Virus record (IMG/VR): IMGVR_UViG_3300032236_001850
Span: 124,001-188,000 of that record
Reading direction: 5' to 3' (one strand)
Length of the DNA stretch: 64,000 bases
Position numbers and translations under genes: made by a program. The notes under the pieces were generated by a model. The model ran no database searches. It was not told where the DNA came from and saw only the letters and a program-made list of their open reading frames with translations. Shown piece after piece: positions 7,246 through 53,380 of this stretch; the stretch's first letter is position 1, and every line of letters begins with the position of its first letter.

Positions 7246-7298
7246 GCGACAAAATTAAAAAATGTTTGCGGATAAAAAAAATAATGCACAATAAAAAA

Positions 7299-7680: not shown

Positions 7681-7876
7681 AAAAGTTACATTAGCGGAGG
7701 GATTACGAGAAGCTGCAGGAAATCTCACAATAGTTTATATCTGTTACGCATTAATACAGTGGGAACCAAATCCACTGAAATGGAATCCAATAGTACAGTA
7801 CTTTGCCATTTTTATGTCGTGTATTTATTTTCCATATAGGGACAATCAAAGATGGGAGAGGGATAAGGACAAATAA
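7673..7876 (+). CDS. Small two-TM membrane protein
   Basis: Two hydrophobic segments flanking WEPNPLKW. Confidence 0.75.
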   Translation: MSRKVTLAEGLREAAGNLTIVYICYALIQWEPNPLKWNPIVQYFAIFMSCIYFPYRDNQRWERDKDK

Positions 7877-7921
7877 TCCCACGGTGTCCGCACATACACG
7901 ACCGCATTCGATATATAATGT

Positions 7922-8554: not shown

Positions 8555-8586
8555 AGCACATCAAAAAGATGTGCTTTTATTTTTTT
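8554..8586 (+). terminator. Intrinsic terminator
   Basis: AAGCACATC-aaaaa-GATGTGCTT then T run. Confidence 0.75.
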
Positions 8587-8634
8587 ATTCCGAAATGATT
8601 TCATATATTTGCAATGATAATTATAATTGTAACT

Positions 8635-9734: not shown

Positions 9735-9804
9735 AAAAAATATCAAAATAAATTTTTTTAATAAAAAAGAATTTCCTACATTTGCATAACAAATAAAAAA
9801 AATC

Positions 9805-39026: not shown

Positions 39027-39512
39027 ATGAAACACATACTCTCCATAGACGAGGCATATAGACACGTACCAAAACAGATAACAAAATTTTATTTTACTTT
39101 CGAAAGTACAAATCCAATAAACAGAAGGGACGCAAGCTCCAATGTTCCTTTGTATGGTTCCACACTTATAGGTGATGCCTTATCACTATACAAGGAAGAA
39201 AAAGATCAATCAGAACAGCCAGAAAATGTACGTTTTTACGAGGGTATTTGTAAGCTTTCCATAGCTTATATGAAAGACCTAGAAGAACTAGCAAATCAGA
39301 GATCAGTCAGCATACAATCAATATTAGATGCATTGGAACAAAATCCACCAGTTAGAGAGTTGCATAATATTCTAAGGGATAACACAGAATGGGATTTTTA
39401 CTATATGTACGATGCTATTTCATTTCAGGATGAGGAAGAAAGGGAGAGATTAGTAGTTATCAGACCTTATCTCGATATACTCACTGAACTTAATCCAAAT
39501 AAACTAAGATAA
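39027..39512 (+). CDS. Hypothetical protein with CTS-like leader
   Basis: MKHILSIDEA; GATATATA 4 nt upstream. Confidence 0.8.
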   Translation: MKHILSIDEAYRHVPKQITKFYFTFESTNPINRRDASSNVPLYGSTLIGDALSLYKEEKDQSEQPENVRFYEGICKLSIAYMKDLEELANQRSVSIQSILDALEQNPPVRELHNILRDNTEWDFYYMYDAISFQDEEERERLVVIRPYLDILTELNPNKLR

Positions 39513-39516
39513 AGAA

Positions 39517-39885
39517 ATGATTAAGAAATACGACGATTTTATTAATGAATCAATAGGTTCCACATTCACACCTGAACAGCAGGAAATCATAAAAAATTTT
39601 GCTAAGGATCTGGAAAAGGTTTCATTGTATAAAATAAGTACAGAAACAGATAGTTCAAAATTTGAAATAAAGATGAATAAGTATTCTAATTTGTATGAAT
39701 ATGTCTATTCATGCTACATCAGCAATCGTATTTTATATCTAAGAAATTATAAAAGAAGAACATCGGGTTCATTAAGAGGTGTTATCTCTAATTTTCATGA
39801 GGAGTCACCAGAATCTCTAGAGGATGCATTGGGTATTATTGCAAAGAATACAGTTAAACAATACGAATTTAAAAGAATAAAATAA
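39517..39885 (+). CDS. Hypothetical protein, CTS-like leader plus FKRIK tail
   Basis: MIKKYDDFINES...YEFKRIK. Confidence 0.8.
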   Translation: MIKKYDDFINESIGSTFTPEQQEIIKNFAKDLEKVSLYKISTETDSSKFEIKMNKYSNLYEYVYSCYISNRILYLRNYKRRTSGSLRGVISNFHEESPESLEDALGIIAKNTVKQYEFKRIK

Positions 39886-39892
39886 TAGAATC

Positions 39893-40039
39893 TTATTTTT
39901 TCTTTCTTTTTTTCTTACGTTTAATTCTAACACAATTAGGAACTATCCTACCATCCAGTTCTTTAGTGCCTATCTGCTTAAATCCTACCCAGCATGGATC
40001 ATTCTTTTCGGCTAAAAATTCATCAAATTTTAGTATCAT
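39893..40039 (-). CDS. 48-aa CTS-leader peptide with CW...NCV motif and basic tail (not in ORF track)
   Basis: MILKFDEFLAEKNDPCWVGFKQIGTKELDGRIVPNCVRIKRKKKRKKK; TAATG coupling to 40039..40620. Confidence 0.8.
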   Translation of the reverse strand: MILKFDEFLAEKNDPCWVGFKQIGTKELDGRIVPNCVRIKRKKKRKKK

Positions 40040-40620
40040 TAGTCTTCTATTTTTTTAAATTCTCTAATCGAATTTTCATCAAAAATTGCAACATTCTTGC
40101 TTCCTCTTTCAACCAAACAGAATCCATCATAGCCCGATTTTTTAATTGCTTCTAATATAGGAGCACATTCTATGATTCTCCATGCTCCGTGTTTGATTCT
40201 CCAAAGGTAGTGATAAACACTATCACCTGGGTCATCAACATCAAATTCTCTGTCAGTGTCGTAATCATATCCCTTCATACCAGAAGCACTAACAGGTTTA
40301 AATTTGGTACCGTTAGTTTCATCCTCATATCCGCTAACAATCATCTTCTCTATCACACCCTTCAGGTCAAGCTTCTTGGCAATCTTAGGGTCCATAGGGT
40401 CACAAAGGTTAACTCCAGGTTTTAGCCACACTTCCCAAACTGCTCCATCCGGAAATTTTGATCTCTCATCAGCACCAGAAAAATCCTTAGCAAATGCAAG
40501 ATTACTAGTCAGAAATATACAACCACCAAATCTTTTCATTTTAGGTGGGAAATCTCCTTTTCTATTTCCGTGGTACAATCTCTCACCAACGAAAGATTCA
40601 AATAAAGCTATGTGTCTCAT
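40039..40620 (-). CDS. ADP-ribosyltransferase-fold protein with CTS-like leader
   Basis: RLYHG, IFLTSNLAFAKDF, GYDGF...VAIFDENSI. Confidence 0.7.
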   Translation of the reverse strand: MRHIALFESFVGERLYHGNRKGDFPPKMKRFGGCIFLTSNLAFAKDFSGADERSKFPDGAVWEVWLKPGVNLCDPMDPKIAKKLDLKGVIEKMIVSGYEDETNGTKFKPVSASGMKGYDYDTDREFDVDDPGDSVYHYLWRIKHGAWRIIECAPILEAIKKSGYDGFCLVERGSKNVAIFDENSIREFKKIED

Positions 40621-40635
40621 TAATGTATGTTAAGA

Positions 40636-41208
40636 TTAGTATCTATCATCATCATATTTTTCCTCAATCATGAAATCAAAAATATCTTCGTATCCTGAGG
40701 TGTAATCAAGTTTTTTGGCTATATCCTTAATCTCACTATCAGTTTTTCGGTGATTATCGAAAGCTTCAGCAAATTCTTCATTAAATTCTAATTTTGGCTT
40801 CCAATCCATTTTTCTTGCTAAATTGATTGCCTCTATCTCTTTTTGATTAACCGGAGGTGCATCAAAAATTCCAACCTCAACATCCACCGTATCTCTATCG
40901 TAAAGGTACCATCCACACGAATCCAGCCAATCATGTAGTAATTCTTCAAGTTTTTCAGATGTTGCATTTTCTGGAACCTGAAAGTTCCATGGTTCTAAAG
41001 GATTTTCGTCATCAACACCAATCCAATTCGAAAGAACAACAAGAAGCTCGTTGAAATCCTTTTGTAGATTCATACCCTTAGAAACCCCAATTGTTGTAGT
41101 TTCTTCCTCCTCCGGACAATAAAAAAATATTTTTGCCACTATAATTTTACCTCCACCTGAACCCGAGGATTCAGATTCGAATAGTTCATATTTTCTAATG
41201 TGTTTCAT
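40636..41208 (-). CDS. Acidic hypothetical protein with CTS-like leader
   Basis: MKHIRKYELFES; GATATATA at 41226 (minus). Confidence 0.82.
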   Translation of the reverse strand: MKHIRKYELFESESSGSGGGKIIVAKIFFYCPEEEETTTIGVSKGMNLQKDFNELLVVLSNWIGVDDENPLEPWNFQVPENATSEKLEELLHDWLDSCGWYLYDRDTVDVEVGIFDAPPVNQKEIEAINLARKMDWKPKLEFNEEFAEAFDNHRKTDSEIKDIAKKLDYTSGYEDIFDFMIEEKYDDDRY

Positions 41209-41300
41209 CGATTAACTTTTTTGTATATATATCGGTTAAACAAATCCTCATTTTTATTTTTTTATTTGGAAAGGATTTCTTATATTTGCATATCAAATCA

Positions 41301-41516
41301 ATGGAAATGGACAGATACCCAAAGGACGAGCAACTAACAGGAATTTACGTTAAGAGATGTAAGTGTGGTGCCAGACCTTATATGGACAGAGTTATGTCAG
41401 GTGGCACACCCAAGTGGATCAAGTGCGACAACTGTGGGAGAACTGGTGAGAGTGATCGAGATAAGCAGACAGCAATAGATAATTGGAATCAAAATAAAAT
41501 AGTTTACGAATCATGA
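41301..41516 (+). CDS. Lar-like (restriction alleviation) zinc-ribbon protein
   Basis: KRCKCG...IKCDNCG...AIDNWN pattern. Confidence 0.6.
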   Translation: MEMDRYPKDEQLTGIYVKRCKCGARPYMDRVMSGGTPKWIKCDNCGRTGESDRDKQTAIDNWNQNKIVYES

Positions 41517-41749
41517 GCGACACTAAAACAAAATCGGAACAAATAGTAGAAATAGAGGAAAGAATTAAGCACTTATTTGCAGAAAGTTCATTAACTAAGG
41601 AACAGTTAAAGACGTCCAATTCCCTGATAGAGGAATGGAAAGTATTAACAGGATGGAAAACTGATGAGACGCCATTCCTGAAAGGATCTCACGACCGGAT
41701 TCTTGATGACAAGCCTGTGTGGTACTATAAATTAAGTCAAAAATACTAA
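41513..41749 (+). CDS. Hypothetical protein
   Basis: ATGA coupling. Confidence 0.75.
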   Translation: MSDTKTKSEQIVEIEERIKHLFAESSLTKEQLKTSNSLIEEWKVLTGWKTDETPFLKGSHDRILDDKPVWYYKLSQKY

Positions 41750-41774
41750 GATGATAAATTTAAAATAAACCACG

Positions 41775-42125
41775 ATGAAAACAATTAAATTTACATTTAT
41801 TCTTTTAATAACAGCATTTGTTGCAGTATCTTGTGAGAAGCAAAGCAAACCAGTGCAGGAAATATTAAAAACTGACGATCGTAGCGATCTCATTGTTTAT
41901 GGAGATTATGATGACTACGGAGTACATCATGACGACGGTACTGCATTCTATATGCTAAGAACGTGTTATAGAGATTGCAGAATCACTGACTGTGGCACAT
42001 CAGAGTATATTGATAAACTAATCAAGCAAAGAAGAAATGATGTGGTTGCTCTCCAAAAAGAGTATGACTCGCTGGTTCATAAAACTGAAACAGATTACGA
42101 TAAACTAAAAGAAAAAACCGAATAA
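41775..42125 (+). CDS. Lipoprotein
   Basis: Lipobox AVS-C. Confidence 0.82.
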   Translation: MKTIKFTFILLITAFVAVSCEKQSKPVQEILKTDDRSDLIVYGDYDDYGVHHDDGTAFYMLRTCYRDCRITDCGTSEYIDKLIKQRRNDVVALQKEYDSLVHKTETDYDKLKEKTE

Positions 42126-42134
42126 AAATATAAT

Positions 42135-42224
42135 ATGGGATATTATCACGCTTTTATGATGCTCTGCGCATTTGTTATCATCATAATACTAGGTGGAATC
42201 TACGAGAACACAAAAAGAAAGTAA
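42135..42224 (+). CDS. 29-aa TM peptide (not in ORF track)
   Basis: MGYYHAFMMLCAFVIIIILGGIYENTKRK; TAATG coupling. Confidence 0.5.
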   Translation: MGYYHAFMMLCAFVIIIILGGIYENTKRK

Positions 42225-42298
42225 TGAAACAACGGATCATCACCTGGATATTAACACGAACCACGTGTATCTGGCTTAGATGGATAAAAAGAAAATAG
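42224..42298 (+). CDS. 24-aa peptide ending RWIKRK (not in ORF track)
   Basis: MKQRIITWILTRTTCIWLRWIKRK. Confidence 0.45.
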   Translation: MKQRIITWILTRTTCIWLRWIKRK

Positions 42299-42299
42299 C

Positions 42300-42494
42300 A
42301 TGGCAACAACCTGGAAATCAGAAAAACAGTCACTGGCAGAGTTAAATGACAAGGTGAAAGAACAAGCTAAGCTAATCAAAACCCTTAAGAGCGAGGAGGA
42401 GATTAGAAAGATGTTCGATAGGTATAATGAGTTCATAGCACACCACGACATCGAGGAGTGGCAACCGTGGATAGACAAACAATTTAAAAAATAA
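42300..42494 (+). CDS. Hypothetical protein
   Basis: 64 aa. Confidence 0.75.
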   Translation: MATTWKSEKQSLAELNDKVKEQAKLIKTLKSEEEIRKMFDRYNEFIAHHDIEEWQPWIDKQFKK

Positions 42495-42499
42495 AAATC

Positions 42500-42832
42500 A
42501 TGTCAGTAAGAGTAGAACAGTATTTAATTTATGGCTATAAGTTCGGGGAAGAATTTACAGAGGAGTATTGGGAAAAGGATTTTAGAGATGATATGGAATG
42601 GGATAAGAGAAAACCTAAGGACCAACCATTCTTTATCACTGATGGAATGAGCGGAGATTACACGTTCTTTGGTTTGATCTGTCAACTATCAAATGGCTGG
42701 GACGAAGATTACGATGCAAAGGAAATCGATTTCCCGTACAACAAAGGGATTATTATTGAAAAATTCTCGGAGTTATATCCAGATATGGAAATTCCAGGAA
42801 TTAAATTATATTATTTACCACACTATGTTTAA
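42500..42832 (+). CDS. Hypothetical protein
   Basis: 110 aa; DGMSGDYTFFG. Confidence 0.8.
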   Translation: MSVRVEQYLIYGYKFGEEFTEEYWEKDFRDDMEWDKRKPKDQPFFITDGMSGDYTFFGLICQLSNGWDEDYDAKEIDFPYNKGIIIEKFSELYPDMEIPGIKLYYLPHYV

Positions 42833-42843
42833 AAGATAAACAA

Positions 42844-43134
42844 ATGAAAAAGATAATCTTATTCTTAGCAATCATCACCCTAGTATCATGCGATGATGGT
42901 ACAAAACCAAAATTTATAGGTCAGGACATCATAGACGGTAAGGTTTCTGCAATAAAACCAGGAACAGCGGGAGGATATGGACATCCAGCGGATCTTCCAG
43001 TCATCTGGGTACAGACACCCACTGAAACAAGAAAGGTTGAAATTCCATTTGAGTATGAAGGAAAATGGAAAGTTGGCGATACCTGTTTACTAATCATAGA
43101 GAGATACGTGGAACCAACAGAGACAACCAAATAA
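42844..43134 (+). CDS. Lipoprotein
   Basis: Lipobox LVS-C. Confidence 0.82.
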   Translation: MKKIILFLAIITLVSCDDGTKPKFIGQDIIDGKVSAIKPGTAGGYGHPADLPVIWVQTPTETRKVEIPFEYEGKWKVGDTCLLIIERYVEPTETTK

Positions 43135-43586
43135 TGAACAAAGTATTCCAGCGTAACGTGAACAAAGGGAATGGTGATTGCGTCAGAGCTGCACTGTCAA
43201 CTCTATTTGGTATTCAGTACGAGGATTGTGAACCGCTTGCTCCGGATGAACACCAAGCATACAACATGCTGCTCTTCTATAGAAAAATGGGATACGATGA
43301 ATTCTCATTCTATAGAACCAATATACAGTCAGAAGAGAGAGGATTTCCATCACTTGCAGAGGTATTGGAATTCGACGGAGGAATCAATGGGCTCTTCTAT
43401 GCATCGGTTAAGTCTAGAACATTCGACGATGGTACTCATGCAGTTCTTATAGACAAGAGCGGAACTGTTGTACATGATCCGAATCCAAACCAAAAATGTT
43501 TGGGTCTAGGTATAGAAGAGGTCATAGATGTCGTGGTGACGGGGAATTGGCACATTTCAACGGAAGGTAAACTAATAAGAGAATAA
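43134..43586 (+). CDS. Papain-fold (C39-like) peptidase candidate
   Basis: GDCVRA (Cys), THAV (His), VHDP (Asp); TAATG start 43134. Confidence 0.6.
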   Translation: MNKVFQRNVNKGNGDCVRAALSTLFGIQYEDCEPLAPDEHQAYNMLLFYRKMGYDEFSFYRTNIQSEERGFPSLAEVLEFDGGINGLFYASVKSRTFDDGTHAVLIDKSGTVVHDPNPNQKCLGLGIEEVIDVVVTGNWHISTEGKLIRE

Positions 43587-43587
43587 A

Positions 43588-43803
43588 ATGAAAGTAAAAA
43601 TAGAATACATGCTCATCACTGATCTACTAGGAGATAGACCCAACGGTAGATGTCCAGAGATCTTCAAGAGCGTAGAGGAGGCAACCCAGCATTGGAGAAT
43701 CCATTATCAAAATAGAAGCAAGGGTGATGGTTACGATGAGTACTGGAGAAAAACCCCTCTAAGAATACAGCAGATCATCACAACCAATCTTTGGGAAATT
43801 TAA
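43588..43803 (+). CDS. Hypothetical protein
   Basis: 71 aa. Confidence 0.75.
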   Translation: MKVKIEYMLITDLLGDRPNGRCPEIFKSVEEATQHWRIHYQNRSKGDGYDEYWRKTPLRIQQIITTNLWEI

Positions 43804-43815
43804 AACACAAACGCC

Positions 43816-44016
43816 ATGCCTGAACAATTTAAAGACTACATCAAAGGGAAATACCCAAACCTTGACACAGATAGAATCCTGTCTCTGATAGATCAGAACG
43901 TCAAACAGATACAACCAAATCTAAACAATCCAACCAGAGGATGTGTGGTGCCAATCGGCTGTGATCTGAACAAGAACCTCATCATTAAAATCATTTCAGA
44001 GTATCTAAATCCATAA
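43816..44016 (+). CDS. Hypothetical protein
   Basis: 66 aa. Confidence 0.7.
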   Translation: MPEQFKDYIKGKYPNLDTDRILSLIDQNVKQIQPNLNNPTRGCVVPIGCDLNKNLIIKIISEYLNP

Positions 44017-44018
44017 AC

Positions 44019-44225
44019 ATGAGACTAGTTAAGTGGAAGACGTTGATCCAGAATCAGCATGCCTTCGAATACGACGAATTCACTATGAAGGGCACAGTCA
44101 TGATAGAGGATGACTCGCTGTCAGACGAAGGGATCAGTAAGAGGATAGAGGAGAGGCTGCTCACTCAAGAACAGAGAGACAACAGGGTTTCAAAAATCTC
44201 CATCACCCACATTCCCATCATCTAA
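44019..44225 (+). CDS. Hypothetical protein
   Basis: 68 aa. Confidence 0.7.
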   Translation: MRLVKWKTLIQNQHAFEYDEFTMKGTVMIEDDSLSDEGISKRIEERLLTQEQRDNRVSKISITHIPII

Positions 44226-44268
44226 GAACCCGATTTTGCTAAGATATATAGAGAAAATAAGCAACAAA

Positions 44269-44568
44269 ATGGAAAATATTAAACCTTACGAGTCATTCAA
44301 TTTGGAACCAGAAGAAGTAAACGAAAACTTCTGGACTAAAATGTTTGGCAGACCCACAGTCGATGATGCTGCACATGACTCACTAAGAGGAAAAGGCTTC
44401 AGTCACAGAGGCAAGGACAGCGAGAGATCGGAAGACAACTACATCATGTTTGATGGTAACAAATTCTATCCAGATCAGATTGAGTATGATGATTATCATT
44501 CAACCAAGGAACTTCCAAGAGTAGAGAATGGCAAACTCATCATAGCCAACCCAGCCTGGAGTATGTAA
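44269..44568 (+). CDS. Hypothetical protein with CTS-like leader
   Basis: MENIKPYESFNLE; GATATATA at 44243. Confidence 0.8.
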   Translation: MENIKPYESFNLEPEEVNENFWTKMFGRPTVDDAAHDSLRGKGFSHRGKDSERSEDNYIMFDGNKFYPDQIEYDDYHSTKELPRVENGKLIIANPAWSM

Positions 44569-44581
44569 TCATATCACACAT

Positions 44582-44610
44582 AAAAAATCCACCTTCACGG
44601 TGGATTTTTT
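44582..44610. terminator. Bidirectional intrinsic terminator
   Basis: AAAAATCCACC-ttcac-GGTGGATTTTT. Confidence 0.88.
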
Positions 44611-44677
44611 ATGACATTATCTCTAGGAACTCGGCCAATCCGAGCATATTACTAGGTGATATACGGATGGATTAAAA

Positions 44678-46609
44678 TTAGATAAATCCTCTTTTTAATA
44701 ATTTACCAATCTTTCCGGCGTCCGTTATTCCAGTTCTTTTTATAACACCAGCTTTTACATCAGGATGCGAGTCTAGCATATAAATATCCAATGGCATCTT
44801 TTTAAAATAATCATCCAAAGCAGAGTCACCTATAATCGAATCAAGAAGCGTAAATGTTTCCGGATGTTCCTTAAAAAACTCTATAAATCTACCCACATCC
44901 CATCGACCCTCATTCTGCATAATATATTTTTTACCATTTATATCAAATGAAAAATACTCACCAATCTCATCAGGTAACCCCTTAAGTGATTTCAAATTGT
45001 TACCTGTACAAATAAAATATCCTCCGACCTCCCCCGGTGCTCCTTCTAAGGATTCAAGATTGTTATCATAACATTGGAAGCTTCTACCAACGATTTCAGG
45101 TGCTCCCTCCAGAGTCTTTAATTTGTTTTTTGCACACACAAATGAATTCTGGATTTCCCTAGGTGCTCCCTTCAATGACACAAGTTTGTTATCATTACAA
45201 AAGAAGCCAAAGGAAAATTGAGGTGCTCCCTCCAATGAGGTTAACTCGTTACTGGTACAACTGTATTCACCCTCAACTATCTCCGGACCTCCTTTTAATG
45301 ACTTCAGCTTGTTTTCTTGACACTCAAACCTACCGGCCACCGTTCTAGGTCCTCCCTCCAGTGATTCTAGTTTATTCTTATTGCAAGTGAAATTACCATT
45401 AACAATTTGAGGTGCACCTTCAAGGGTTTTCAAATTGTTGTCTGAACAATCGAAACCATCCACCGTTTGTGGTGAACCTATTAACGATTCTAGATTACTA
45501 TTATTACAAGCTAAACTTTTCACTTTCTCTGGTGCTCCCATCAGGTTTTTTAAATTGTTGTATGAACAATTGAAACCACCATCCACCGTTTGTGGTGCTC
45601 CTTTTAGTGATGTTATATTATTTCTAGAACAGTTGAAATCTCCAGTAACGTGACCAAATTCAATGCCTTGGAAATTTCTTATTCCCCAGTCATTACATCT
45701 AAAAGTTCCTTTTATGTCCACAAGTCCAGTCTCCTCATTTATTTTCCATTCCCCACTAGTGCACTCGTTCAACCATTTAACTTTATTCGATTCCCTTCCA
45801 GTTCCACTAAGATCTTTAATTCCGGTTCTTTTTAGCACACCACTCTTTAAATCGGGAAGGTCGTCTAGTAGATATAAGTCCTCAGGATTCTCAGTGAAAT
45901 GATTGTCAAGTATATTCTCAATTTTTTTACCGTTTACTATTCCAAGATCGGAAAGACATGTCATCACATCCATATCATCTAATTTAATAGCGATACGAAC
46001 AAGGTCAGCAGCAAGATCAGATTTTATCTTAGAATTAAGAACAACCCCAGCTTTAATACCAGGAATTGACAGCAGAAATTCAAGTTGTTTGAATTGTCTA
46101 TAAATTTTGTAAATACCAGAATTTCCAGTAGGAAATCCTCTACTGTCACTGTTTGATGATGTTCTTAATTCTTCCTTAGATAGCTTATCTAGGATTCTTT
46201 TGATCGAAAGATTTAGTCCATAGAATTGTCCATTAAAAACAGCTTCCTTCAATGTAGAATATGAGATCTTTGAAACATATGTCATTTGTGCAATACTATA
46301 CAATATCAACTTTGTCATTGCATCGTTCATCTCCTCTTGTGTGGAGAAAGGCATATCTTTCTCAATTGTAAAACTTCCATAAATCAGGTTGACCTTTCCA
46401 TCACCGGAAGGCTTTAATGAACATGAGTAGGAGGTTCCAAAATTATATTCTCTCACCCCCAGGGAACTACTCTTGGCACCATCTCCCAAAAATTTCCTAG
46501 CCTTCTTATAAATAGGAAGTTTACTCAATGTTTCAAAAGACGGAAACTCCTCCTTGTCCTTTTTGGTTGCGCCTTCAAACAACTCATTAAATGTTTTTAT
46601 TCTTCTCAT
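44678..46609 (-). CDS. Chimeric LRR protein: CTS leader, domain, TGIKD module, 22-aa LRRs, second TGIKD module
   Basis: About 11 repeats of CxxNxLxSLxGAPxxVxGxF; module at ILDNHF...RTGIKD and at the C-terminus. Confidence 0.88.
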   Translation of the reverse strand: MRRIKTFNELFEGATKKDKEEFPSFETLSKLPIYKKARKFLGDGAKSSSLGVREYNFGTSYSCSLKPSGDGKVNLIYGSFTIEKDMPFSTQEEMNDAMTKLILYSIAQMTYVSKISYSTLKEAVFNGQFYGLNLSIKRILDKLSKEELRTSSNSDSRGFPTGNSGIYKIYRQFKQLEFLLSIPGIKAGVVLNSKIKSDLAADLVRIAIKLDDMDVMTCLSDLGIVNGKKIENILDNHFTENPEDLYLLDDLPDLKSGVLKRTGIKDLSGTGRESNKVKWLNECTSGEWKINEETGLVDIKGTFRCNDWGIRNFQGIEFGHVTGDFNCSRNNITSLKGAPQTVDGGFNCSYNNLKNLMGAPEKVKSLACNNSNLESLIGSPQTVDGFDCSDNNLKTLEGAPQIVNGNFTCNKNKLESLEGGPRTVAGRFECQENKLKSLKGGPEIVEGEYSCTSNELTSLEGAPQFSFGFFCNDNKLVSLKGAPREIQNSFVCAKNKLKTLEGAPEIVGRSFQCYDNNLESLEGAPGEVGGYFICTGNNLKSLKGLPDEIGEYFSFDINGKKYIMQNEGRWDVGRFIEFFKEHPETFTLLDSIIGDSALDDYFKKMPLDIYMLDSHPDVKAGVIKRTGITDAGKIGKLLKRGFI

Positions 46610-46744
46610 CCGTTATATATCCAAATTAAATGAAACTACATATACCCATGTGGCAATCACAGACTGAAATACATAGATAAAATAGAATCAAAAGAACCTC
46701 ATTCGAAGTGAACCTGTCTAAAATCCGATACCGATATATACAAA

Positions 46745-47152
46745 ATGAAACACATCAACACATTCTACCAACACATTAACGAATCAAAATCTCAAATAGC
46801 GGAAGCCATAGAGGTTAACGCAGATGAATTTGAATCAGCCGGTTCAAAAGAAGGAAATTTCATGGTTAATTTTCCAAAGGAAGATGTTGAAATTTTGAAG
46901 GATTTGAGTGAATTGATTGGATTTGAATGCGTTTCACAAGTTGGCATATTTCTAATGGTTACTAGAGATCCAAGCACTAGAGAAAAACCATTGGCATATT
47001 TTTCTAAAACCGCTAAATTATACAGAATGGAAATATACCCGAAGGAGCTTACCTGAGATAAATTATACTACTTGGGTGATTCACCAGAATCATTGATGGC
47101 TGTTTTCCTCAGCTATGTTGGATGGAGACCAGAGTGGATTAAAATAAGATAA
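46745..47152 (+). pseudogene. CTS-leader/WIKIR gene interrupted by in-frame TGA (47054-47056)
   Basis: Frame continues after TGA as DKLYYLGDSPESL...PEWIKIR-TAA. Confidence 0.75.
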
Positions 47153-47156
47153 TCAA

Positions 47157-47584
47157 ATGAAACACATACATACATTCTACCAACACATCAACGAATCTCA
47201 ACTCGAAATAGAATCGACCAATCTACCGGATGGGGTAAAAGAGATTGATGAAGAGGAACTTAAAAAATGGGGAAAAAAGCCACACAAATTCTTACCATCG
47301 GGGATGATGAAGCATTTAAACAGTTTAAAAATTGGACTGGAGTGACCAAATCTGAGGATCCCCGGGATTTGCTAGTCCTTAAATCATCATCCACCTCAGA
47401 GGAATATCAATGGTGCTTTGTTCTTTGGACCAAGGAAGAAGATGAGGAGAAAGCAAGACGATTTCTTTCAAGAACACTAGAGGGTGTTTTTGTAACATAC
47501 ATTATCACCTCACCGTCACAAAAAGTTAGAGAGCAGCTAATGCACTACATCAACGATTATGTTAAATGGATCAAAATCAGATAG
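47157..47584 (+). pseudogene. CTS-leader/WIKIR gene split by -1 frameshift at A-AAA-AAG (47273-47279)
   Basis: Leader in frame of 47157; WIKIR in the -1 frame (47267..47584). Confidence 0.75.
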
Positions 47585-47605
47585 ACAAATAAAACATAGA
47601 CAATA

Positions 47606-48046
47606 ATGAAAAACTTAATGATTTTTACTGATTTTTTAAAAGAATCAATTAATTCAGGTGGAATGCCACATCGAAGATATGAAGAAATAACTAAAGATCA
47701 ATGGCGAGAGAAAAAAGAAACACTCCAATGTGTTAGCTTGACAAATGATGAGATAGAGTCAATAGATGAAATATATGAATTTATAAGGGATGTTATATAC
47801 CCAAAAGCAGAAAGAATAAAGTTTTGGGAGTTTTCTCAGAAAGACACTCAATATCTCATCGAAATACGTGATTTAAACATTATGATTACTAAATATTCAC
47901 CATCAATGTGGTTAATTTTTACTAATAGGAATGAGGATGTAGAAGATGAACATTTTTATATTGCAACTTCATTAAAGGAAACAATCGATCTTACAGCATA
48001 TCTTGCGGGTGAATTATTTCATATCGAATGGATCAAAATAAGATAG
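47606..48046 (+). CDS. CTS-leader/WIKIR protein
   Basis: MKNLMIFTDFLKES...IEWIKIR. Confidence 0.85.
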   Translation: MKNLMIFTDFLKESINSGGMPHRRYEEITKDQWREKKETLQCVSLTNDEIESIDEIYEFIRDVIYPKAERIKFWEFSQKDTQYLIEIRDLNIMITKYSPSMWLIFTNRNEDVEDEHFYIATSLKETIDLTAYLAGELFHIEWIKIR

Positions 48047-48050
48047 AAGA

Positions 48051-48683
48051 ATGAAACACATCCATACATTCTCACAACACATCAACGAGAGCTCCTCTCA
48101 GGAGATCATGGACTTCTGCAAGAAGTACAAGATTTCAATTGAACAGTTTAGAGGACAGGAGGAAATCCCAGGTGATTTTAGAAAACTTTCAAATCTAAAA
48201 TCCATTCCTTCAGGTTTCAACCCAAAGGTTGAAGGGAATCTGACTCTTTCCTCGATTTACAGCTTACCTGATGGGTTTTCACCCGTTGTTGGTGGAGATC
48301 TGGAACTGCATGAACTGAATCATTTGCCAGAGGGATTCTCACCCACTGTGGGAAGAGATCTACATCTGAACTATCTAAATCGTATTCCATATGAATTCAC
48401 TGTTAATGTGGGAGACAATCTGATTTTAGATAATGTGTATGAGGTTGGGAAGGGATTCTCACCCACTGTGGGCGGCAATCTGGATCTAGGATCACTCAGA
48501 ATTTATGCGGAAGGATTCTCACCCATCGTGGGCGGGAATCTAATCTTAAATAAAATGGAAAGCATTCCGCTAAAAGGTGTTTCGCTAAAAGGAGTTAAAG
48601 GAAAGATAGAACTTTTTCACAATTACAATCGTGTAAATCTAGAAACCATAGCGGGTGATATAAAATGGATCAAAATAAGATAG
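48051..48683 (+). CDS. CTS-leader/WIKIR protein with 22-aa LRR-like repeats
   Basis: Repeats LxxLPEGFSPxVGGDLxL; DNA repeat ggattctcaccca about every 66 bp. Confidence 0.85.
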   Translation: MKHIHTFSQHINESSSQEIMDFCKKYKISIEQFRGQEEIPGDFRKLSNLKSIPSGFNPKVEGNLTLSSIYSLPDGFSPVVGGDLELHELNHLPEGFSPTVGRDLHLNYLNRIPYEFTVNVGDNLILDNVYEVGKGFSPTVGGNLDLGSLRIYAEGFSPIVGGNLILNKMESIPLKGVSLKGVKGKIELFHNYNRVNLETIAGDIKWIKIR

Positions 48684-48695
48684 GGTATATAGCAC

Positions 48696-49517
48696 ATGAA
48701 AAGAATACTAACATTCCACCAGCTATTTGAAGCAGCCAAACCAAAGGACACATCTTGGATGCCAACCCCCGCGGAGATAAGTCAATTGGAAATTTTTCAA
48801 AATCTGAGAGATGATCATCTTATACGTTTATCCGAACCATACCTCTTAACACAGGGTCAGATAGAAAGGAATGTGAGATCAATAAGTTTTTCAACAGACA
48901 CCAATAACCTTTATAGACTGGAGCCAAATTCAGATGGCACAATCAACATCAAATTTGGAAGAAGCTACATAGCCAAAAATAAGCCTTTCAAAAACCAGGA
49001 GGAAATGACGGATGTTATTATTTACTTAATGATCGTAACAATAGCAATTTATGATCCTGTATGGAGTCGTAAGCCACACAATCCACCCAAAAGAACTCCT
49101 TTCAATGACGATCACGTGAAACTAAATGGGGAATTGGAGAGAGGTGATCTCGAAGGCTTGCTAAACGGCATCACAGAGCTTATGAAATCCAAATTTGGAT
49201 TCTGTGAGGAAAGACTGGTCCAGATTGCGATCATTCTGATGTGGTACATGAAGTCAGCCACACAGGAGGCAAAAAACAACTTCATAAAGCAACTGATCGT
49301 CAATGTGACAGCAGAGAGAATGTTCTTGCATTGGTGCCATCTGCCTAAAATTTTATCTCATCGCCAACCCTTCGTGTCGATGCCTGCAGTTACGGAAGGT
49401 CTCTCCATGGCATTCTCAGATTTTCTTAATAACAATGGGGATGCTCCAATGCCACCAGCTCTGGGGGAGTTCCTTTCCAAGATAACCGATGGGTTCAGAT
49501 GGATTAAAATCAGATAA
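48696..49517 (+). CDS. CTS-leader/WIKIR protein
   Basis: MKRILTFHQLFEA...FRWIKIR; N-terminal part resembles that of 44678..46609. Confidence 0.85.
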   Translation: MKRILTFHQLFEAAKPKDTSWMPTPAEISQLEIFQNLRDDHLIRLSEPYLLTQGQIERNVRSISFSTDTNNLYRLEPNSDGTINIKFGRSYIAKNKPFKNQEEMTDVIIYLMIVTIAIYDPVWSRKPHNPPKRTPFNDDHVKLNGELERGDLEGLLNGITELMKSKFGFCEERLVQIAIILMWYMKSATQEAKNNFIKQLIVNVTAERMFLHWCHLPKILSHRQPFVSMPAVTEGLSMAFSDFLNNNGDAPMPPALGEFLSKITDGFRWIKIR

Positions 49518-49576
49518 CCAGATAAATAAATCATCACTGATTAAAGTGGGATATATAAATAAAATAAAACCAAAAA

Positions 49577-50062
49577 ATGAAACACCTAATCGCCTTTGAG
49601 ATTTTTGAAAATGAGAATATGGAATCTCTAATTCCTAAAATTGCTATTTTTAGCGAGGGTGACTACTATAAACTAAAGGAATATATAAAATCCAATAACA
49701 TAAAGACTGATCTCATTCCCCACCATTTCCCATACGAGGAATATTACAGAGATAATATTAAACGTGGTCAGAGGGGCAATAATTTTTTCTATATCATCAA
49801 CGATAAGGTTATGTTGTACCCAAGTCCAGGATACGATAAAAAATTGAAAAAACTAACAGATAGGGATCTAAATTTTCCTAAATCCCACAGAGCTGCATAC
49901 ATTAAAGATTTCAGAAACATCCCACTAGAGGAACTTTACAACAACTCGGAAGAAATACTTGGGTACTCAATATTCCTACTGGACAAACTTATAACAAAGG
50001 CGAAGCAAATGACAAGAAGCAAATTAACACCATTTGAGGTGACTCTATTCGATAGAGATTAG
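49577..50062 (+). CDS. Hypothetical protein with CTS-like leader
   Basis: MKHLIAFEIFEN; GATATATA at 49550. Confidence 0.82.
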   Translation: MKHLIAFEIFENENMESLIPKIAIFSEGDYYKLKEYIKSNNIKTDLIPHHFPYEEYYRDNIKRGQRGNNFFYIINDKVMLYPSPGYDKKLKKLTDRDLNFPKSHRAAYIKDFRNIPLEELYNNSEEILGYSIFLLDKLITKAKQMTRSKLTPFEVTLFDRD

Positions 50063-50065
50063 CAC

Positions 50066-50521
50066 ATGAAACACATACACACATTTCACCAACACGTCAA
50101 CGAATCCCAATCTCTACCTTCAGGGGTAAGCAAGGTGACAGCCGATGAGTATACAAAACAAAAATGTGTTCCTCTATCCCAGGAGGAAACTGAAAACATC
50201 TTATTCTTAACTAATATAGTGGAACTTGCTTCTTCGACAGATCCACAGAGGAAAAACGCGGATAGCGAGGACAATCAGATCTATCTTTGCGCTGGTTTTT
50301 ATCCTTATGGAGCTATTCCGCCATGGGCATTCTTCGGAAAGTCAAAGTCAGGAATTTACTATCTATCAGCTAATCCCACACGATTAACGGACACAGAAGG
50401 CCAGGAAAGCAACTATTACGCTGCAAACTCATTGCAACCTCTAATTTCAATTGCTCTTGATATGTTCATTAAACTTGGAATGGTTGATACCTCCGGAATC
50501 AGCTGGATCGAAATCAAGTAA
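50066..50521 (+). CDS. CTS-leader protein ending WIEIK
   Basis: MKHIHTFHQHVNES...ISWIEIK. Confidence 0.85.
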   Translation: MKHIHTFHQHVNESQSLPSGVSKVTADEYTKQKCVPLSQEETENILFLTNIVELASSTDPQRKNADSEDNQIYLCAGFYPYGAIPPWAFFGKSKSGIYYLSANPTRLTDTEGQESNYYAANSLQPLISIALDMFIKLGMVDTSGISWIEIK

Positions 50522-50665
50522 ACCTCTAAGGGGCCGGCCACCGGAGATCTAACATCCAACATCATTATAGCACGTTTAAGGGACAATAATCTACAAACCC
50601 ATATCTACATCTTATTAGAGAGATATAAACAAGCTACACTCAAATAAACAACCGCATATAAGCAT

Positions 50666-51028
50666 ATGAAACACATCCTACATATAGACACGTATCAACA
50701 CATGAACGAGTCAATAACAAACCCATCATGGGAGAGAGAAGGCACAAGAGTCACACTGGCAGATATAGAGCCACACCTAGAAGAGGAGTTGCTAATCCAA
50801 CCGGACTCCATAGCACATCTACTCATACCCACAGAGAGGGATCCTAGAAGAGTGGCACAAGCCAATCTGGATCACCCAATCATACTCACAAGAGACAAGG
50901 GCCAGCTCACAAGCATACTAGATGGACAACACAGAGTCACAAAAGCCATAGAGCAAGGCAAGTGGGTAAAGGCAAGACAACTCGATCTAGACACAGTCCC
51001 AGAACACATAGCCAAGGTGCTCAGATAA
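50666..51028 (+). CDS. ParB/Srx N-terminal-like protein with CTS-like leader
   Basis: RVAQANLDHPIIL...ILDGQHRVTKA. Confidence 0.75.
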   Translation: MKHILHIDTYQHMNESITNPSWEREGTRVTLADIEPHLEEELLIQPDSIAHLLIPTERDPRRVAQANLDHPIILTRDKGQLTSILDGQHRVTKAIEQGKWVKARQLDLDTVPEHIAKVLR

Positions 51029-51543
51029 CCCAACTCTCATAGAGGCATTCTAAAGGGACTTAGGAAGCAAACCATATAGAGAGATAGTCAGAATAATATA
51101 ACACAGACACGGCCAGGTAATCGCGTTTAACGACCCCCTTCGGAAGCCCCTCTGCATGTGTGAGTTACCACCCAGGGCTGTCCCAACAAGATTTCCTCGT
51201 CGCCCCGATTTCCCATTTCATTCCACTTCTCTCCACTTTGTTCCACTGGGCAAGAGTTTCCACACAGAAACCCACGTTTTCTTTAGGAAAAACCAAATCT
51301 TTTATATATCCGTGATTTTGGGACGAGGTTCCCTGAACACCCATCACTATCTCGCCCCGAACCATGCCTCTTCCCTACATCTCTCTATGTGGAATGGATC
51401 TCCTGCCTCTCTATTAGAGACGGAACATTCTATGTGGCATTATCTCTCTATGCTCTCTCTATAGGAATGACTACCGGGTTGGCCGGCCCTCACCCCTATC
51501 TTGGCCCCAAATTCCCCCATTGCCGGCAGAGGATATATAGTGT
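51029..51543. other. GC-richer non-coding locus with skew flip and CTCTCTAT repeats (candidate origin/terminus)
   Basis: CTCTCTAT at 51381, 51407, 51444, 51455, inverted copy at 51076; TGGCCGGCCC at 51480 inverted to 50530. Confidence 0.45.
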
Positions 51544-52185
51544 ATGAGACACCTTAAGATTTTTGAAATGAACCCAGCCTTCTACGAGGATCCACCGGAA
51601 CCAAAACGTGAGGGAGCGGATGTGGAGTACCCAGAGCATGAGCAGCTCTTCTCCCCTGTGTTCTGCCATGAGGGGTATCCAGAAGAAGATAAAGTCAGAG
51701 GAGAGAAAGGTTACCCTGACTTTGCCATAGTGATGGACAAGACACCTCAGAAAGCCATATGGGTTGTGAGAGATATTGACGATGTCATTCCCGAGAGCTA
51801 CCTGACCTATTGGGAAACGTCCGAAGGAGGCGAGCATGTCCAAGACACCAACTCCATCCTGAACTTTGCCACTGACGAATTCAAAGCCGGTAGATGGGTG
51901 GATGGCTTTGATGCTTGGGACGAGGATGAATGGGCAGTGGATCTTGTGAAGATCACCACTGTGGAAGATGTGGATTCCCTTATCCAAGATCTCTCCAACT
52001 TCATTAACCCGAGCCACGCCTCCTACTATGGCAAGGTGAGAAATCCCAAGATCAAAGATCACTACAGAATTAGTCACGTTCCAGGTGAGGGCGAGATCTC
52101 TTTGGCGAAGAGAGCAATCAGAGCGCTAGAGATATACAAGAGAAGGATTGAATCAAACACCGTCGGCGGGTCCACACCGGCTTAA
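51544..52185 (+). CDS. Acidic hypothetical protein with CTS-like leader
   Basis: MRHLKIFEM; GATATATA 4 nt upstream. Confidence 0.82.
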   Translation: MRHLKIFEMNPAFYEDPPEPKREGADVEYPEHEQLFSPVFCHEGYPEEDKVRGEKGYPDFAIVMDKTPQKAIWVVRDIDDVIPESYLTYWETSEGGEHVQDTNSILNFATDEFKAGRWVDGFDAWDEDEWAVDLVKITTVEDVDSLIQDLSNFINPSHASYYGKVRNPKIKDHYRISHVPGEGEISLAKRAIRALEIYKRRIESNTVGGSTPA

Positions 52186-52274
52186 TCCCAGCCCACTATG
52201 GAGTCCACTCTCCCAAGTCCAGTCCGGAACCCGGCCTCATGAATGGCCTTTCATTTTTCAAAAACAAAAGTAAT

Positions 52275-52315
52275 AAAAATCCTCGAGATAAAAAAATATT
52301 TCGAGGATTTTTTTT
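52275..52315 (+). terminator. Terminator overlapping next promoter
   Basis: AAAAATCCTCGA...TCGAGGATTTTT-T run. Confidence 0.8.
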
Positions 52316-52365
52316 ATTCGAAAGGATTTTGTATATTTGCAATGTAAACAATAAGGCCCCAGGTA

Positions 52366-52390
52366 CATACTATGTTACTAACATACTATG
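52366..52390. repeat. Nested palindrome element, copy 2
   Basis: catactatgttactaacatactatg. Confidence 0.9.
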
Positions 52391-52415
52391 TCTGAGACCA
52401 CGGCAAACACGAACT

Positions 52416-52619
52416 ATGCGCAGACTTAAGAACGGATGGGAGATCGCGGGAGCGACATCAATATGTATTGCTCTCGCGAGCATCTTTATATACATCATGT
52501 GGGAACTCGGCTTATATGGGATGCCTAGTACTACCGATGTGGTTGTCTCAGTAGTACTCACAGCTGTCACACTCTTTCTCTTTATCTGGAGCCCACCCGA
52601 CGAGAACTCTAATACATAG
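52416..52619 (+). CDS. 67-aa two-TM protein flanked by palindrome repeats
   Basis: MRRLKNGWEIAG...; stop codon lies inside repeat copy 3. Confidence 0.7.
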   Translation: MRRLKNGWEIAGATSICIALASIFIYIMWELGLYGMPSTTDVVVSVVLTAVTLFLFIWSPPDENSNT

Positions 52620-52640
52620 TATGTTACTAACATACTATGT
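52614..52640. repeat. Nested palindrome element, copy 3 (perfect 13-bp arms)
   Basis: ACATAGTATGTTA-C-TAACATACTATGT. Confidence 0.92.
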
Positions 52641-52683
52641 CTGGGACTGACCACGAACACGTACACGAACTAATTAATAGAAA

Positions 52684-52989
52684 ATGAAAACATATCAACT
52701 TAAAACACCTTACTCAGAGTACACCGTTATATTATCGGGCGGCACGTATGCGAACGGACGTCAAGCTATTCGCATACTAGACGCGGAGGATGGGTTACCA
52801 GTTATGACTGCCACTGTGAATGTCCCTGAGGTGGATCTGGAACCAGGTGAGATCATCATCAAGAACTACTCAGAGAACGAAGGGTGCTTGCCCTTTCTCA
52901 TCACCAACGGTGTTGTCTCCTCTGTCGAGAGATGGGTTGGCCACGGTATGGCTGTTGTGAAACTCCTGATAGACATAGACGATATATAG
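52684..52989 (+). CDS. DUF4313-like protein
   Basis: YANGRQAI...ATVNVP...IIKNYSENEG. Confidence 0.65.
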   Translation: MKTYQLKTPYSEYTVILSGGTYANGRQAIRILDAEDGLPVMTATVNVPEVDLEPGEIIIKNYSENEGCLPFLITNGVVSSVERWVGHGMAVVKLLIDIDDI

Positions 52990-53005
52990 AGGAAAACTCT
53001 ATAGA

Positions 53006-53380
53006 ATGAAACACCTAATGCTTTTTGAAAGCTTCTTTCGCCGCGGTGCGATGGATCCGACCGCCTTGCAATTGGTCAAAATCGGCGGTGCGGTTAATCC
53101 GGCTTTAGGCTTCCTTAAAAAACACGACATAGATACCCTTACCGAAGCTGGTATAGAGACCGAAGTGGTTGGAGAAATCACAGGGAAAGACGACTACGCT
53201 TTCTGGGATATCAACGGTGTTTTATCGGATCCCTATTATGTTGCTTTCACTCATCCTGGCAAGGAGAATTCCCTTATGACAAAGGAGAAGAATTTCGAGA
53301 TACATCCTGGTAAAATATACTTCCGAAGAAAGGGTGGTTGGGCGAAAGAAAACGTCAGTGATTTCATCCAATCAAGATAA
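53006..53380 (+). CDS. Hypothetical protein with CTS-like leader
   Basis: MKHLMLFESFF; GATATATA at 52981. Confidence 0.8.
   Translation: MKHLMLFESFFRRGAMDPTALQLVKIGGAVNPALGFLKKHDIDTLTEAGIETEVVGEITGKDDYAFWDINGVLSDPYYVAFTHPGKENSLMTKEKNFEIHPGKIYFRRKGGWAKENVSDFIQSR

What the first reader, a model, noticed from the sequence alone, without database searches (positions are those of the whole stretch)
46745..47152. In-frame TGA separates the capsid leader from the WIKIR tag
Seen: ...ELT-TGA-DKLYYLGDSPESL...PEWIKIR-TAA in one frame; the post-stop part aligns with paralogs (EHFYIATSL, SNYYAANSL). TGA is a normal stop elsewhere. Inference: nonsense mutation, or readthrough giving tagged and untagged isoforms.
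Basis: partly seen in the sequence, partly recalled or inferred. Interest (0 to 1): 0.62.

Follow-up and report, generated by a model that had tools for sequence, protein, structure and literature searches.

The report
Recent nonsense mutation in phage gene
The in-frame TGA is real, but it is a single G-to-T change seen only in this phage strain, because all relatives read GGA (glycine) there; it is an ordinary young nonsense mutation in one copy of a small phage gene family, not a conserved readthrough signal.

Summary
ORF 46745..47056 ends in TGA (47054-47056). The same frame stays open for 31 more codons and ends in WIKIR plus TAA (47150-47152). That post-stop part is homologous to paralogs.

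The window lies in a 434.5-kb T4-like jumbo phage with terminal repeats, the standard genetic code and 31 tRNAs, none with a UCA anticodon. Every relative found carries GGA (Gly) at the stop position and encodes an uninterrupted 135-aa protein. These relatives are a 93%-identical protein seen on 11 contigs, three aligned loci at about 96% nucleotide identity, and contigs from three other runs, one of them about 98.5% identical.

The T allele occurs only in the source sample, at contig depth about 39, and in one identical scaffold. A profile search found only 30 representatives of the family. The full-length ones run from an MKH..NES leader to a C-terminal W-x-K/E-I-K/R tail.

A structure model (pLDDT 85) places the last beta-strand and the C-terminal helix after the stop, so the 103-aa product is probably not functional. 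No RNA structure follows the TGA.

Verdict: a young, strain-private nonsense mutation. Low-level leak cannot be excluded. The next gene is also broken in this strain, by a frameshift.

The parts
46745..47053 (+). Upstream part of gene A: 103 sense codons. Its product is the only one made if TGA terminates translation.
   Evidence: The identical 103-aa protein P0003 is called on the source contig and on one identical scaffold only.
46745..46783 (+). N-terminal leader MKHINTFYQHINE. It resembles the T4 capsid-targeting sequence: MK, a hydrophobic residue at position 4, F at position 7, then I-x-E.
   Evidence: The leader is shared by paralogs. T4 ipII/ipIII begin MKTYQEFIAE and ipI begins MKTFKEF, followed later by ITE. 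In T4, residues 4 and 7 direct targeting and residues 8 and 10 direct processing (PMC9026906). The leader is disordered in the model (pLDDT 51-57).
47054..47056 (+). In-frame TGA. Relatives have GGA (Gly), so the lesion is G to T at 47054.
   Evidence: Alignment A2; protein P0002 has G at residue 104; runs X6, X3 and X8 read G at 47054, while X1 reads T at depth 38.7.
47057..47149 (+). Post-stop remainder of gene A: 31 codons that hold the family's conserved YY..SL..L motif, the last beta-strand and the C-terminal helix.
   Evidence: Alignments A3 and A4; the model of the intact ortholog has a strand at 107-111 and a helix at 114-125.
47135..47152 (+). WIKIR tail codons plus the TAA stop.
   Evidence: W131 is invariant and I134 nearly invariant across 29 family members. 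The Ile codons vary synonymously among paralogs (ATT/ATC/ATA).
47157..47584 (+). Gene B, the next paralog. It is frameshifted in this strain only. The A_AAA_AAG heptamer lies at 47273-47279, and a -1 shift there would restore the reading frame through to WIKIR.
   Evidence: Relatives have A7-T where the window has A6-G and encode an intact 141-aa gene.
47606..48046 (+). Gene C: an intact 146-aa paralog with leader and WIKIR tail.
   Evidence: pN/pS of 0.06 against L005.
48051..48683 (+). Gene D: 210 aa, with leader, a repeat-containing body and the WIKIR tail. Relatives lack it.
   Evidence: It is absent in L005 and in X3 (joint 48026 to 48664 with 20 shared letters).
48696..49517 (+). Gene E: 273 aa. 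Its leader and N-terminal domain match the LRR protein's family, but it carries the WIKIR tail.
50066..50521 (+). Gene F: a 151-aa paralog with the tail variant WIEIK.
44656..44685 (+). Orphan remnant ..VIYGWIKIR plus stop, at the edge of the inserted LRR gene.
   Evidence: The insert 44664-46732 is absent from L005.
44678..46609 (-). A 643-aa leader-bearing repeat (LRR-like) protein ending ..IGKLLKRGFI. It is present in this strain and partly in X6, but absent from L005.
   Evidence: (phrog_7816).

Best explanation
Gene A (46745-47152) belongs to a small, fast-changing family of 130-160-aa phage proteins. Each member has an N-terminal T4-CTS-like leader, a compact alpha/beta domain and a C-terminal W-x-K/E-I-K/R tail. 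In this strain one base change, GGA to TGA at 47054, introduced a premature stop. Ribosomes terminate there and make a 103-aa fragment that lacks the last beta-strand, the C-terminal helix and the tail, so the gene is a young pseudogene or at best a weak hypomorph. The post-stop frame is still open and still resembles the paralogs only because the mutation is too recent for decay. Shown here: the stop, the sense codon in all relatives, the restriction of the allele to one population, and the loss of the conserved core. Inferred: loss of function, and capsid targeting by the leader.
For: (1) The ortholog P0002 (135 aa, 93% identity, seen on 11 contigs) is uninterrupted and has Gly at residue 104.

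(2) DNA alignment of L005, L006 and L007 shows GGA against TGA, a single-base difference in about 96%-identical DNA.

(3) Contigs of three other runs read G at 47054. X6 is from the same study, X3 is a pond metagenome and X8 is a viral metagenome. X6 differs at only 4 of 274 bases.

(4) The T allele is the contig consensus in X1 (depth 38.7, identical to the window over 5 kb). It is also on one 434,721-bp ENA scaffold that is identical over 6.3 kb. This makes an assembler error unlikely.

(5) Two of the three post-stop differences from L005 (47099, 47102) are shared with X8's GGA-bearing contig. They are therefore standing polymorphism, not decay after the stop arose.

(6) In the profile search of 1.84 billion representatives, the only members that end at an in-frame stop before the tail are the window's two broken genes (P0003 and P0020). 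The other incomplete hits are one contig cut by adapter (P0007) and two that lack the N-terminus (P0009, P0032). The rest run from leader to tail.

(7) The AF2 model of the intact ortholog (pLDDT 85, pTM 0.76) places strand 107-111 and helix 114-125 after the stop.

(8) The genome uses the standard code. TGA ends 88 of 640 ORFs, with short downstream open stretches. No tRNA has a UCA anticodon and there is no tRNA-Sec. No RNA structure follows the TGA.

(9) The adjacent paralog is also broken in this strain alone, which fits relaxed or loss-favouring selection on these genes.
Against: Only contigs were available, not raw reads, so the allele frequency within the source sample is unknown. UGA is the leakiest stop codon. 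[quoted passage not shown] Some full-length protein with Trp at a loop position may therefore still be made. The ENA scaffold and the JGI contig may derive from the same reads, so the persistence of the allele across samples is not established.
Confidence: 0.82

Rival explanations
1. Programmed or functionally used UGA readthrough. Most ribosomes stop at 47054-47056, but a set fraction inserts Trp via the phage's own tRNA-Trp(CCA), giving an untagged 103-aa isoform and a tagged 135-aa isoform.
For: The post-stop frame is intact and ends exactly in the family tail. UGA is naturally leaky (established knowledge). The phage tRNA-Trp has a 4-bp anticodon stem plus U11-A24. Such tRNAs raised UGA readthrough about 2.5-fold in E. 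coli when overexpressed (PMC13092985). Residue 104 lies in a loop that varies across the family (G/E/D/Q and others), so Trp might be tolerated there.
Against: The stop is not conserved: every relative has GGA, and no other family member has a stop there. No stimulatory structure follows it (z -0.19). TGA ends 88 other ORFs, and the open stretches after them are shorter, not longer. tRNA-Trp genes with a 4-bp stem occur in 8.9% of bacterial tRNA-Trp genes, mostly in genomes with the standard code. The untagged isoform would lack a strand and a helix of the fold.
Confidence: 0.08
2. Sequencing or assembly error: the real genome has G at 47054.
For: The window is a metagenome assembly. The neighbouring gene has an indel in an A-run. 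All records of the T allele could derive from one data set.
Against: Three assemblies agree exactly: the JGI contig, the ENA scaffold and Logan's contig at word depth 38.7. A G-to-T substitution in the consensus at about 39x is not a typical Illumina artefact. Coding density elsewhere is normal.
Confidence: 0.04
3. Adaptive loss. The strain was selected to lose genes A and B, for example because a host defence senses these proteins, so the nonsense and frameshift lesions are escape mutations rather than neutral decay.
For: Two adjacent paralogs are disrupted in the same strain by private changes, while flanking genes are intact. The family is otherwise under purifying selection (gene C pN/pS 0.06, gene A 0.41). 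The region shows rapid gain and loss of cassettes. In T-even phages, CTS-bearing internal proteins are described as diverse anti-restriction factors (PMC3012670).
Against: There is no direct evidence of selection. Two lesions among about seven paralogs can arise by drift if the genes are dispensable. Host and defence systems are unknown.
Confidence: 0.06

Closest known systems
Ordinary premature-stop pseudogene in a phage accessory (hyperplastic) region
   Same: A single-base change turns a sense codon into a stop. Close relatives are intact. The lesion removes the conserved core. A neighbouring paralog is also broken. The surrounding region shows gene gain and loss.
   Different: The downstream frame shows little or no private change (two of its three differences from L005 are shared with an intact allele; the third was not resolved), so the lesion looks young. 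The phage carries a tRNA-Trp of a type linked to UGA leak.
T4 internal proteins IPI, IPII and IPIII with the capsid targeting sequence (CTS)
   Same: The leader starts MK, has a hydrophobic residue at position 4 and F at position 7, and is followed by (I/L)-x-E. The protein bodies behind the shared leader are diverse. The genes sit in variable regions. The genome encodes a gp21-type protease and a gp23-type capsid protein.
   Different: The bodies show no sequence homology to the T4 IPs. The predicted cleavage site is at residue 13, against 10 or 19 in T4. A conserved C-terminal W-x-K/E-I-K/R tail has no T4 counterpart that I know of. Packaging and cleavage are untested. This genome has about 35-40 leader-bearing genes against a handful in T4.
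Programmed UGA readthrough, as in the Q-beta A1 protein (from my own knowledge)
   Same: An in-frame UGA lies between a shorter product and a C-terminal extension in the same frame.
   Different: Here the stop is absent from all relatives and cuts through a folded domain instead of adding a separate one. No stimulatory signal was found.
dnaX-type -1 frameshifting on A_AAA_AAG (relevant to the neighbouring gene B; from my own knowledge)
   Same: The heptamer A_AAA_AAG lies in the right register exactly where the frame breaks, and a -1 slip would restore the full protein.
   Different: Relatives have no frameshift. No downstream structure was found (z -0.63). The phage encodes a tRNA-Lys(CUU), which should reduce slippage on AAG.

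Membership tests
Premature-stop (nonsense) pseudogene | Close relatives carry a sense codon one base away from the stop | tested here: met
   GGA in L005, L006, L007, P0002 and runs X6, X3, X8, against TGA in the window.
Premature-stop (nonsense) pseudogene | The stop removes conserved, structurally required sequence | tested here: met
   The conserved YY..SL..L motif, the invariant W131, strand 107-111 and helix 114-125 all lie after the stop.
Premature-stop (nonsense) pseudogene | The allele is real and not an assembly artefact | tested here: inconclusive
   Three assemblies agree, at depth 38.7. They may share the same reads, and raw reads were not available.
Programmed stop-codon readthrough | The stop codon is conserved at this position among relatives | tested here: not met
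   All relatives read GGA, and no other family member has a stop there.
Programmed stop-codon readthrough | A stimulatory downstream structure or context is present | tested here: not met
   Folding 47040-47160 gives z -0.19 against shuffles. The context is TGA-G.
Programmed stop-codon readthrough | The extended protein is detected | not testable with these tools
   No RNA run or proteome holds this phage.
Stop-codon reassignment or suppressor tRNA (TGA read as Trp, code 4) | A tRNA with a UCA anticodon, and many genes interrupted by TGA | tested here: not met
   None of the 31 tRNAs has a UCA anticodon. Code 11 gives 89% coding coverage, and reading TGA as sense gives no gain beyond that of reading TAG as sense. 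TGA stops are followed by short open stretches.
Selenocysteine insertion | tRNA-Sec, a SECIS hairpin after the UGA, and Cys in relatives | tested here: not met
   There is no tRNA-Sec and no hairpin signal. Relatives have Gly.
T4-type CTS-bearing internal or ejected capsid proteins | N-terminal MK-x-hydrophobic-x-x-F followed by (L/I)-x-E | tested here: met
   The window's leader MKHINTFYQHINE|S compares with T4 MKTYQEFIAE|A and MKTFKEF..ITE|A. Key residues follow PMC9026906.
T4-type CTS-bearing internal or ejected capsid proteins | The genome encodes a gp21-type prohead protease and a gp23-type capsid protein | tested here: met
   PF03420 scores 36.3 bits and PF07068 scores 139.5 bits, both over their cut-offs.
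T4-type CTS-bearing internal or ejected capsid proteins | The protein is packaged into proheads and the leader is cleaved off | not testable with these tools
   This needs virion proteomics.
T4-type CTS-bearing internal or ejected capsid proteins | Sequence or fold homology to known IPs | tested here: not met
   No Pfam or PHROG hit. No significant fold match. The best Z of 7.4 is within background.

The most novel reading that the evidence does not exclude
This strain keeps two adjacent cargo genes running at a trickle by recoding. On this reading, the UGA in gene A is decoded at low level by the phage's own 4-bp-stem tRNA-Trp(CCA), and the frameshift in gene B is bypassed by a -1 slip on A_AAA_AAG. 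Together these would set low doses of two proteins that carry both a capsid-targeting leader and a previously undescribed C-terminal W-x-K-I-R sorting tail.
Probability: 0.05. Interest if true: 0.6.

Novelty: already known. Interest (0 to 1): 0.2.

Why it matters
As a recoding candidate it does not hold up, and this saves follow-up effort: the stop is a private, recent lesion. The gene family around it has modest value. A T4-like jumbo phage carries about 35-40 genes with a CTS-like leader, and one subfamily also shares an invariant C-terminal W-x-K/E-I-K/R tail on unrelated protein bodies. Cassettes are gained and lost by recombination at the tail/leader junctions. If virion proteomics showed that these proteins are packaged, the tail would be a new candidate sorting or docking signal for capsid cargo.

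Tried and rejected
- **Close relatives in viral contigs:** the scan found none for the 103-aa part.
- **Phage DNA:** distant blastn of the 7-kb cluster against 50,697 phage records found no match.
- **Protein families:** Pfam and PHROGs scans of ten cluster proteins gave nothing for the family. Pfam on ten further leader-bearing proteins gave nothing above cut-off.
- **Fold searches:** Foldseek against PDB and BFVD gave no match at E of 0.001 or better. VIA-align wide gave a best Z of 7.4 (actin capping protein; frataxin-like and immunity-protein arrangements follow). The tool's own note treats this as background, so no fold assignment is made. The ESM Atlas gave only unnamed clusters below 0.9.
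- **Literature:** a search for the tail motif returned only noise.
- **Alternative genetic codes:** rejected.
- **Selenocysteine:** rejected.
- **Allele frequency from reads:** could not be measured, because all runs are held as contigs.
- **Back-up stops after TGA:** they come sooner than after other stops. I do not use this as evidence of leak, because overlapping ATGA gene junctions confound it.

Full report
**What is there.** Reading the window at 46400-47400 and listing ORFs shows an ATG at 46745 and 103 sense codons, then TGA at 47054-47056. The same frame continues for 31 codons to W-I-K-I-R (47135-47149) and TAA (47150-47152). Translation with X at the stop gives a 135-residue reading. 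An exact WIKIR-plus-stop occurs six times in the whole genome, all within window 44656-49517, and a WIEIK variant ends at 50521.

**The genome.** The window is bases 124001-188000 of a 434,509-bp virus record with direct terminal repeats.
- It has 35% G+C.
- It uses the standard code: ORFs of 80 aa or more cover 89% of it. Treating TGA as sense gives no gain beyond what treating TAG as sense gives.
- It has 31 tRNA genes, none with a UCA anticodon and no tRNA-Sec.
- It encodes a T4-type prohead protease domain (PF03420, 36.3 bits, inside a 655-aa ORF) and a gp23-type major capsid protein (PF07068, 139.5 bits).

It is therefore a T4-like jumbo phage. Related contigs come from pond and viral metagenomes.

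**The decisive comparison.** A word-based protein search with the read-through translation found P0002. This protein is 135 aa, 93% identical and uninterrupted, with Gly at residue 104, and it was seen on 11 contigs. DNA alignment of three such loci with the window (about 96% identity) shows GGA where the window has TGA, a single G-to-T difference at 47054.

Public runs laid on 44600-49600 gave four results:
- X1, the probable source sample, carries a Logan contig identical to the window at word depth 38.7, with T at 47054.
- X6 is from the same study but another sample. It differs at only 4 of 274 bases there and also holds pieces of the strain-specific LRR gene. It reads G.
- X3, a pond metagenome from another study, reads G.
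- X8, a viral metagenome from a further study, reads G.

The truncated 103-aa protein is on record only from the source contig and from one 434,721-bp ENA scaffold that is identical over 6.3 kb. That scaffold may come from the same reads. Two of the three post-stop differences between the window and L005 (47099 and 47102) are shared with X8's GGA-bearing contig, so they are standing variation, not decay after the stop arose. The third difference (47126) was not among the rows shown. Only contigs were available, so minor alleles within the source sample cannot be seen.

**The family.** A profile of five paralogs was searched against 1.84 billion representative proteins and found only 30 hits at E of 0.001 or better. 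The only members that end at an in-frame stop before the tail are the window's two broken genes (P0003 and P0020). The other incomplete hits are one contig cut by adapter (P0007) and two that lack the N-terminus (P0009, P0032). The remaining members are 127-161 aa. They begin with an MKH-led leader, most often MKH[IL]x[TP][FY]xQH[IL]NES, and they end W-x-[KEQ]-[IVM]-[KRG]. W131 is invariant and I134 nearly so. A YY..SL..L motif just after the window's stop is among the best-conserved internal features.

An AlphaFold2 model of the intact ortholog, built with this alignment, has pLDDT 85 and pTM 0.76. In it the leader (residues 1-20) is disordered and the domain spans about residues 21-125. Strand 107-111 and helix 114-125 lie after the stop position. 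The 103-aa fragment would therefore lack part of the sheet, the closing helix and the tail, and is unlikely to fold.

No Pfam, PHROG, PDB, BFVD or Atlas match identifies the domain. Against L005, gene A has pN/pS of 0.41, gene C 0.06, gene E 0.34, and the flanking genes 0-0.38. The family is under purifying selection in general, and gene A is among the less constrained members.

**Readthrough.** I looked for positive signs.
- No unusual RNA structure follows the TGA (z -0.19).
- The base after the stop is G.
- TGA ends 88 of 640 ORFs of 80 aa or more. The open stretch after those stops is shorter than after TAA or TAG, not longer.
- The one point in favour is the phage's own tRNA-Trp(CCA) at G000 215149-215220. 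It has a C27.A43 mismatch, which gives a 4-bp anticodon stem, and a U11-A24 pair.

A 2026 study reports that 4-bp-stem tRNA-Trp(CCA) raises UGA readthrough about 2.5-fold when overexpressed in E. coli. The same study reports that such genes make up 8.9% of bacterial tRNA-Trp genes, mostly in genomes with the standard code, and that most of them also carry A24 or C9 (PMC13092985). This keeps a low leak possible but does not make the site a programmed one, because the stop is absent from every relative.

**Leader and tail.** T4 ipII and ipIII begin MKTYQEFIAE|A, and ipI begins MKTFKEF, followed later by ITE|A. In T4 the first 10 residues suffice for capsid targeting. Residues 4 and 7 matter for targeting, and residues 8 and 10 for cleavage by gp21 (PMC9026906). 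T-even internal proteins are diverse apart from this leader (PMC3012670).

The window's leaders share MK, a hydrophobic residue at position 4, F or Y at position 7, and an (I/L/F)-x-E shortly after (MKHINTFYQHINE|S, MKRILTFHQLFE|A, MRRIKTFNELFE|G). About 35-40 ORFs in three blocks of the genome carry such a leader. Taken with the T4-type protease and capsid genes, capsid targeting is a reasonable inference. It is untested.

The tail behaves as a protein-level module. Its two Ile codons vary synonymously among paralogs. It is conserved across members that are only 16-29% identical to the first sequence. It also sits on unrelated bodies: gene D has a repeat body, and gene E has an N-domain shared with the LRR protein, which ends in a different tail. 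Its function is unknown. My best guess is that it docks these proteins to a common partner. The literature held here does not mention it.

**The neighbourhood is in flux.**
- Relatives lack the 643-aa LRR gene (insert 44664-46732). An orphan ..GWIKIR plus stop remnant lies at the insert's edge (44656-44685).
- Relatives also lack gene D. In X3 the joint 48026 to 48664 shares 20 letters across the two tails, which points to recombination between tail/leader junctions.
- Gene B (47157-47584) is frameshifted in this strain only. Relatives have A7-T where the window has A6-G and encode an intact 141-aa protein.
- The break in gene B falls on an in-register A_AAA_AAG heptamer (47273-47279). A -1 slip there would give ..WGKK-ATQILT.., against ..WGKKSTQILT.. 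in relatives.
- No structure follows the heptamer (z -0.63), and the phage has a tRNA-Lys(CUU), so I treat it as a second lesion and only a weak recoding candidate.

**Conclusion.** The TGA is a real, recent, strain-private nonsense mutation (GGA to TGA) in one paralog of an uncharacterised leader/tail family (confidence about 0.8). Readthrough as a designed feature is not supported (about 0.08). Assembly error is unlikely (about 0.04). Selection for loss of genes A and B is possible but untested (about 0.06). As a recoding finding this is ordinary. The family itself is a modest lead for capsid-cargo biology.

Noticed in passing
window 47157-47584 (heptamer 47273-47279): The paralog next to the finding is frameshifted in this strain only (A6-G where relatives have A7-T). 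The break lies on an in-register A_AAA_AAG heptamer, and a -1 slip there would restore the whole protein through to WIKIR. No downstream structure was found (z -0.63), and the phage has a tRNA-Lys(CUU).
   Followed up: partly
window 48026-48664 and 44656-46732: Cassettes are gained and lost at tail/leader junctions. Gene D is absent in L005 and X3, where the joint shares 20 letters between two WIKIR tails. The 2-kb LRR gene insert is absent in L005 and has an orphan ..GWIKIR plus stop remnant at its edge.
   Followed up: partly
G000:C1:215149-215220 (outside the window): The phage tRNA-Trp(CCA) has a C27.A43 mismatch (a 4-bp anticodon stem) and a U11-A24 pair. PMC13092985 links these features to raised UGA readthrough, although they are common in bacteria with the standard code.
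   Followed up: partly
whole genome G000: An in-frame back-up stop lies within 5 codons after 74% of TGA stops, against 48% after TAA or TAG (Fisher p 2e-4, ORFs of 100 aa or more). This could reflect leaky UGA, but overlapping ATGA gene junctions confound it.
   Followed up: partly
G000 126-134 kb, 163-177 kb and 194-213 kb (window 2075-10410, 39027-53380): About 35-40 ORFs start with a T4-CTS-like leader, M[KR]x[IL]xx[FY]..[LIF]xE. Besides WIKIR, two other shared C-terminal tails recur: ..IGRKLKSGLM-like (also on the 643-aa LRR protein) and ..DLGDLGF. Ten of these proteins had no Pfam match above cut-off.
   Followed up: partly
G000:C1:296907-297239 (locus L009): The T4-type prohead protease domain (Peptidase_S77) sits inside a 655-aa open frame. 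From my own knowledge that is about three times the length of T4 gp21. This suggests a fused or extended protease.
   Followed up: no
window 50666-51028: A 120-aa ORF has a leader-like start (MKHILHIDTYQHMNES), matches phrog_17560 (unknown function) and contains a DGQHR motif reminiscent of ParB/sulfiredoxin-type domains.
   Followed up: no
window 51156-52666: Long ORFs overlap on both strands (51496-52077 minus against 51544-52185 plus; 52239-52619 plus against 52370-52666 minus). At most one of each pair is likely to be a real gene.
   Followed up: no
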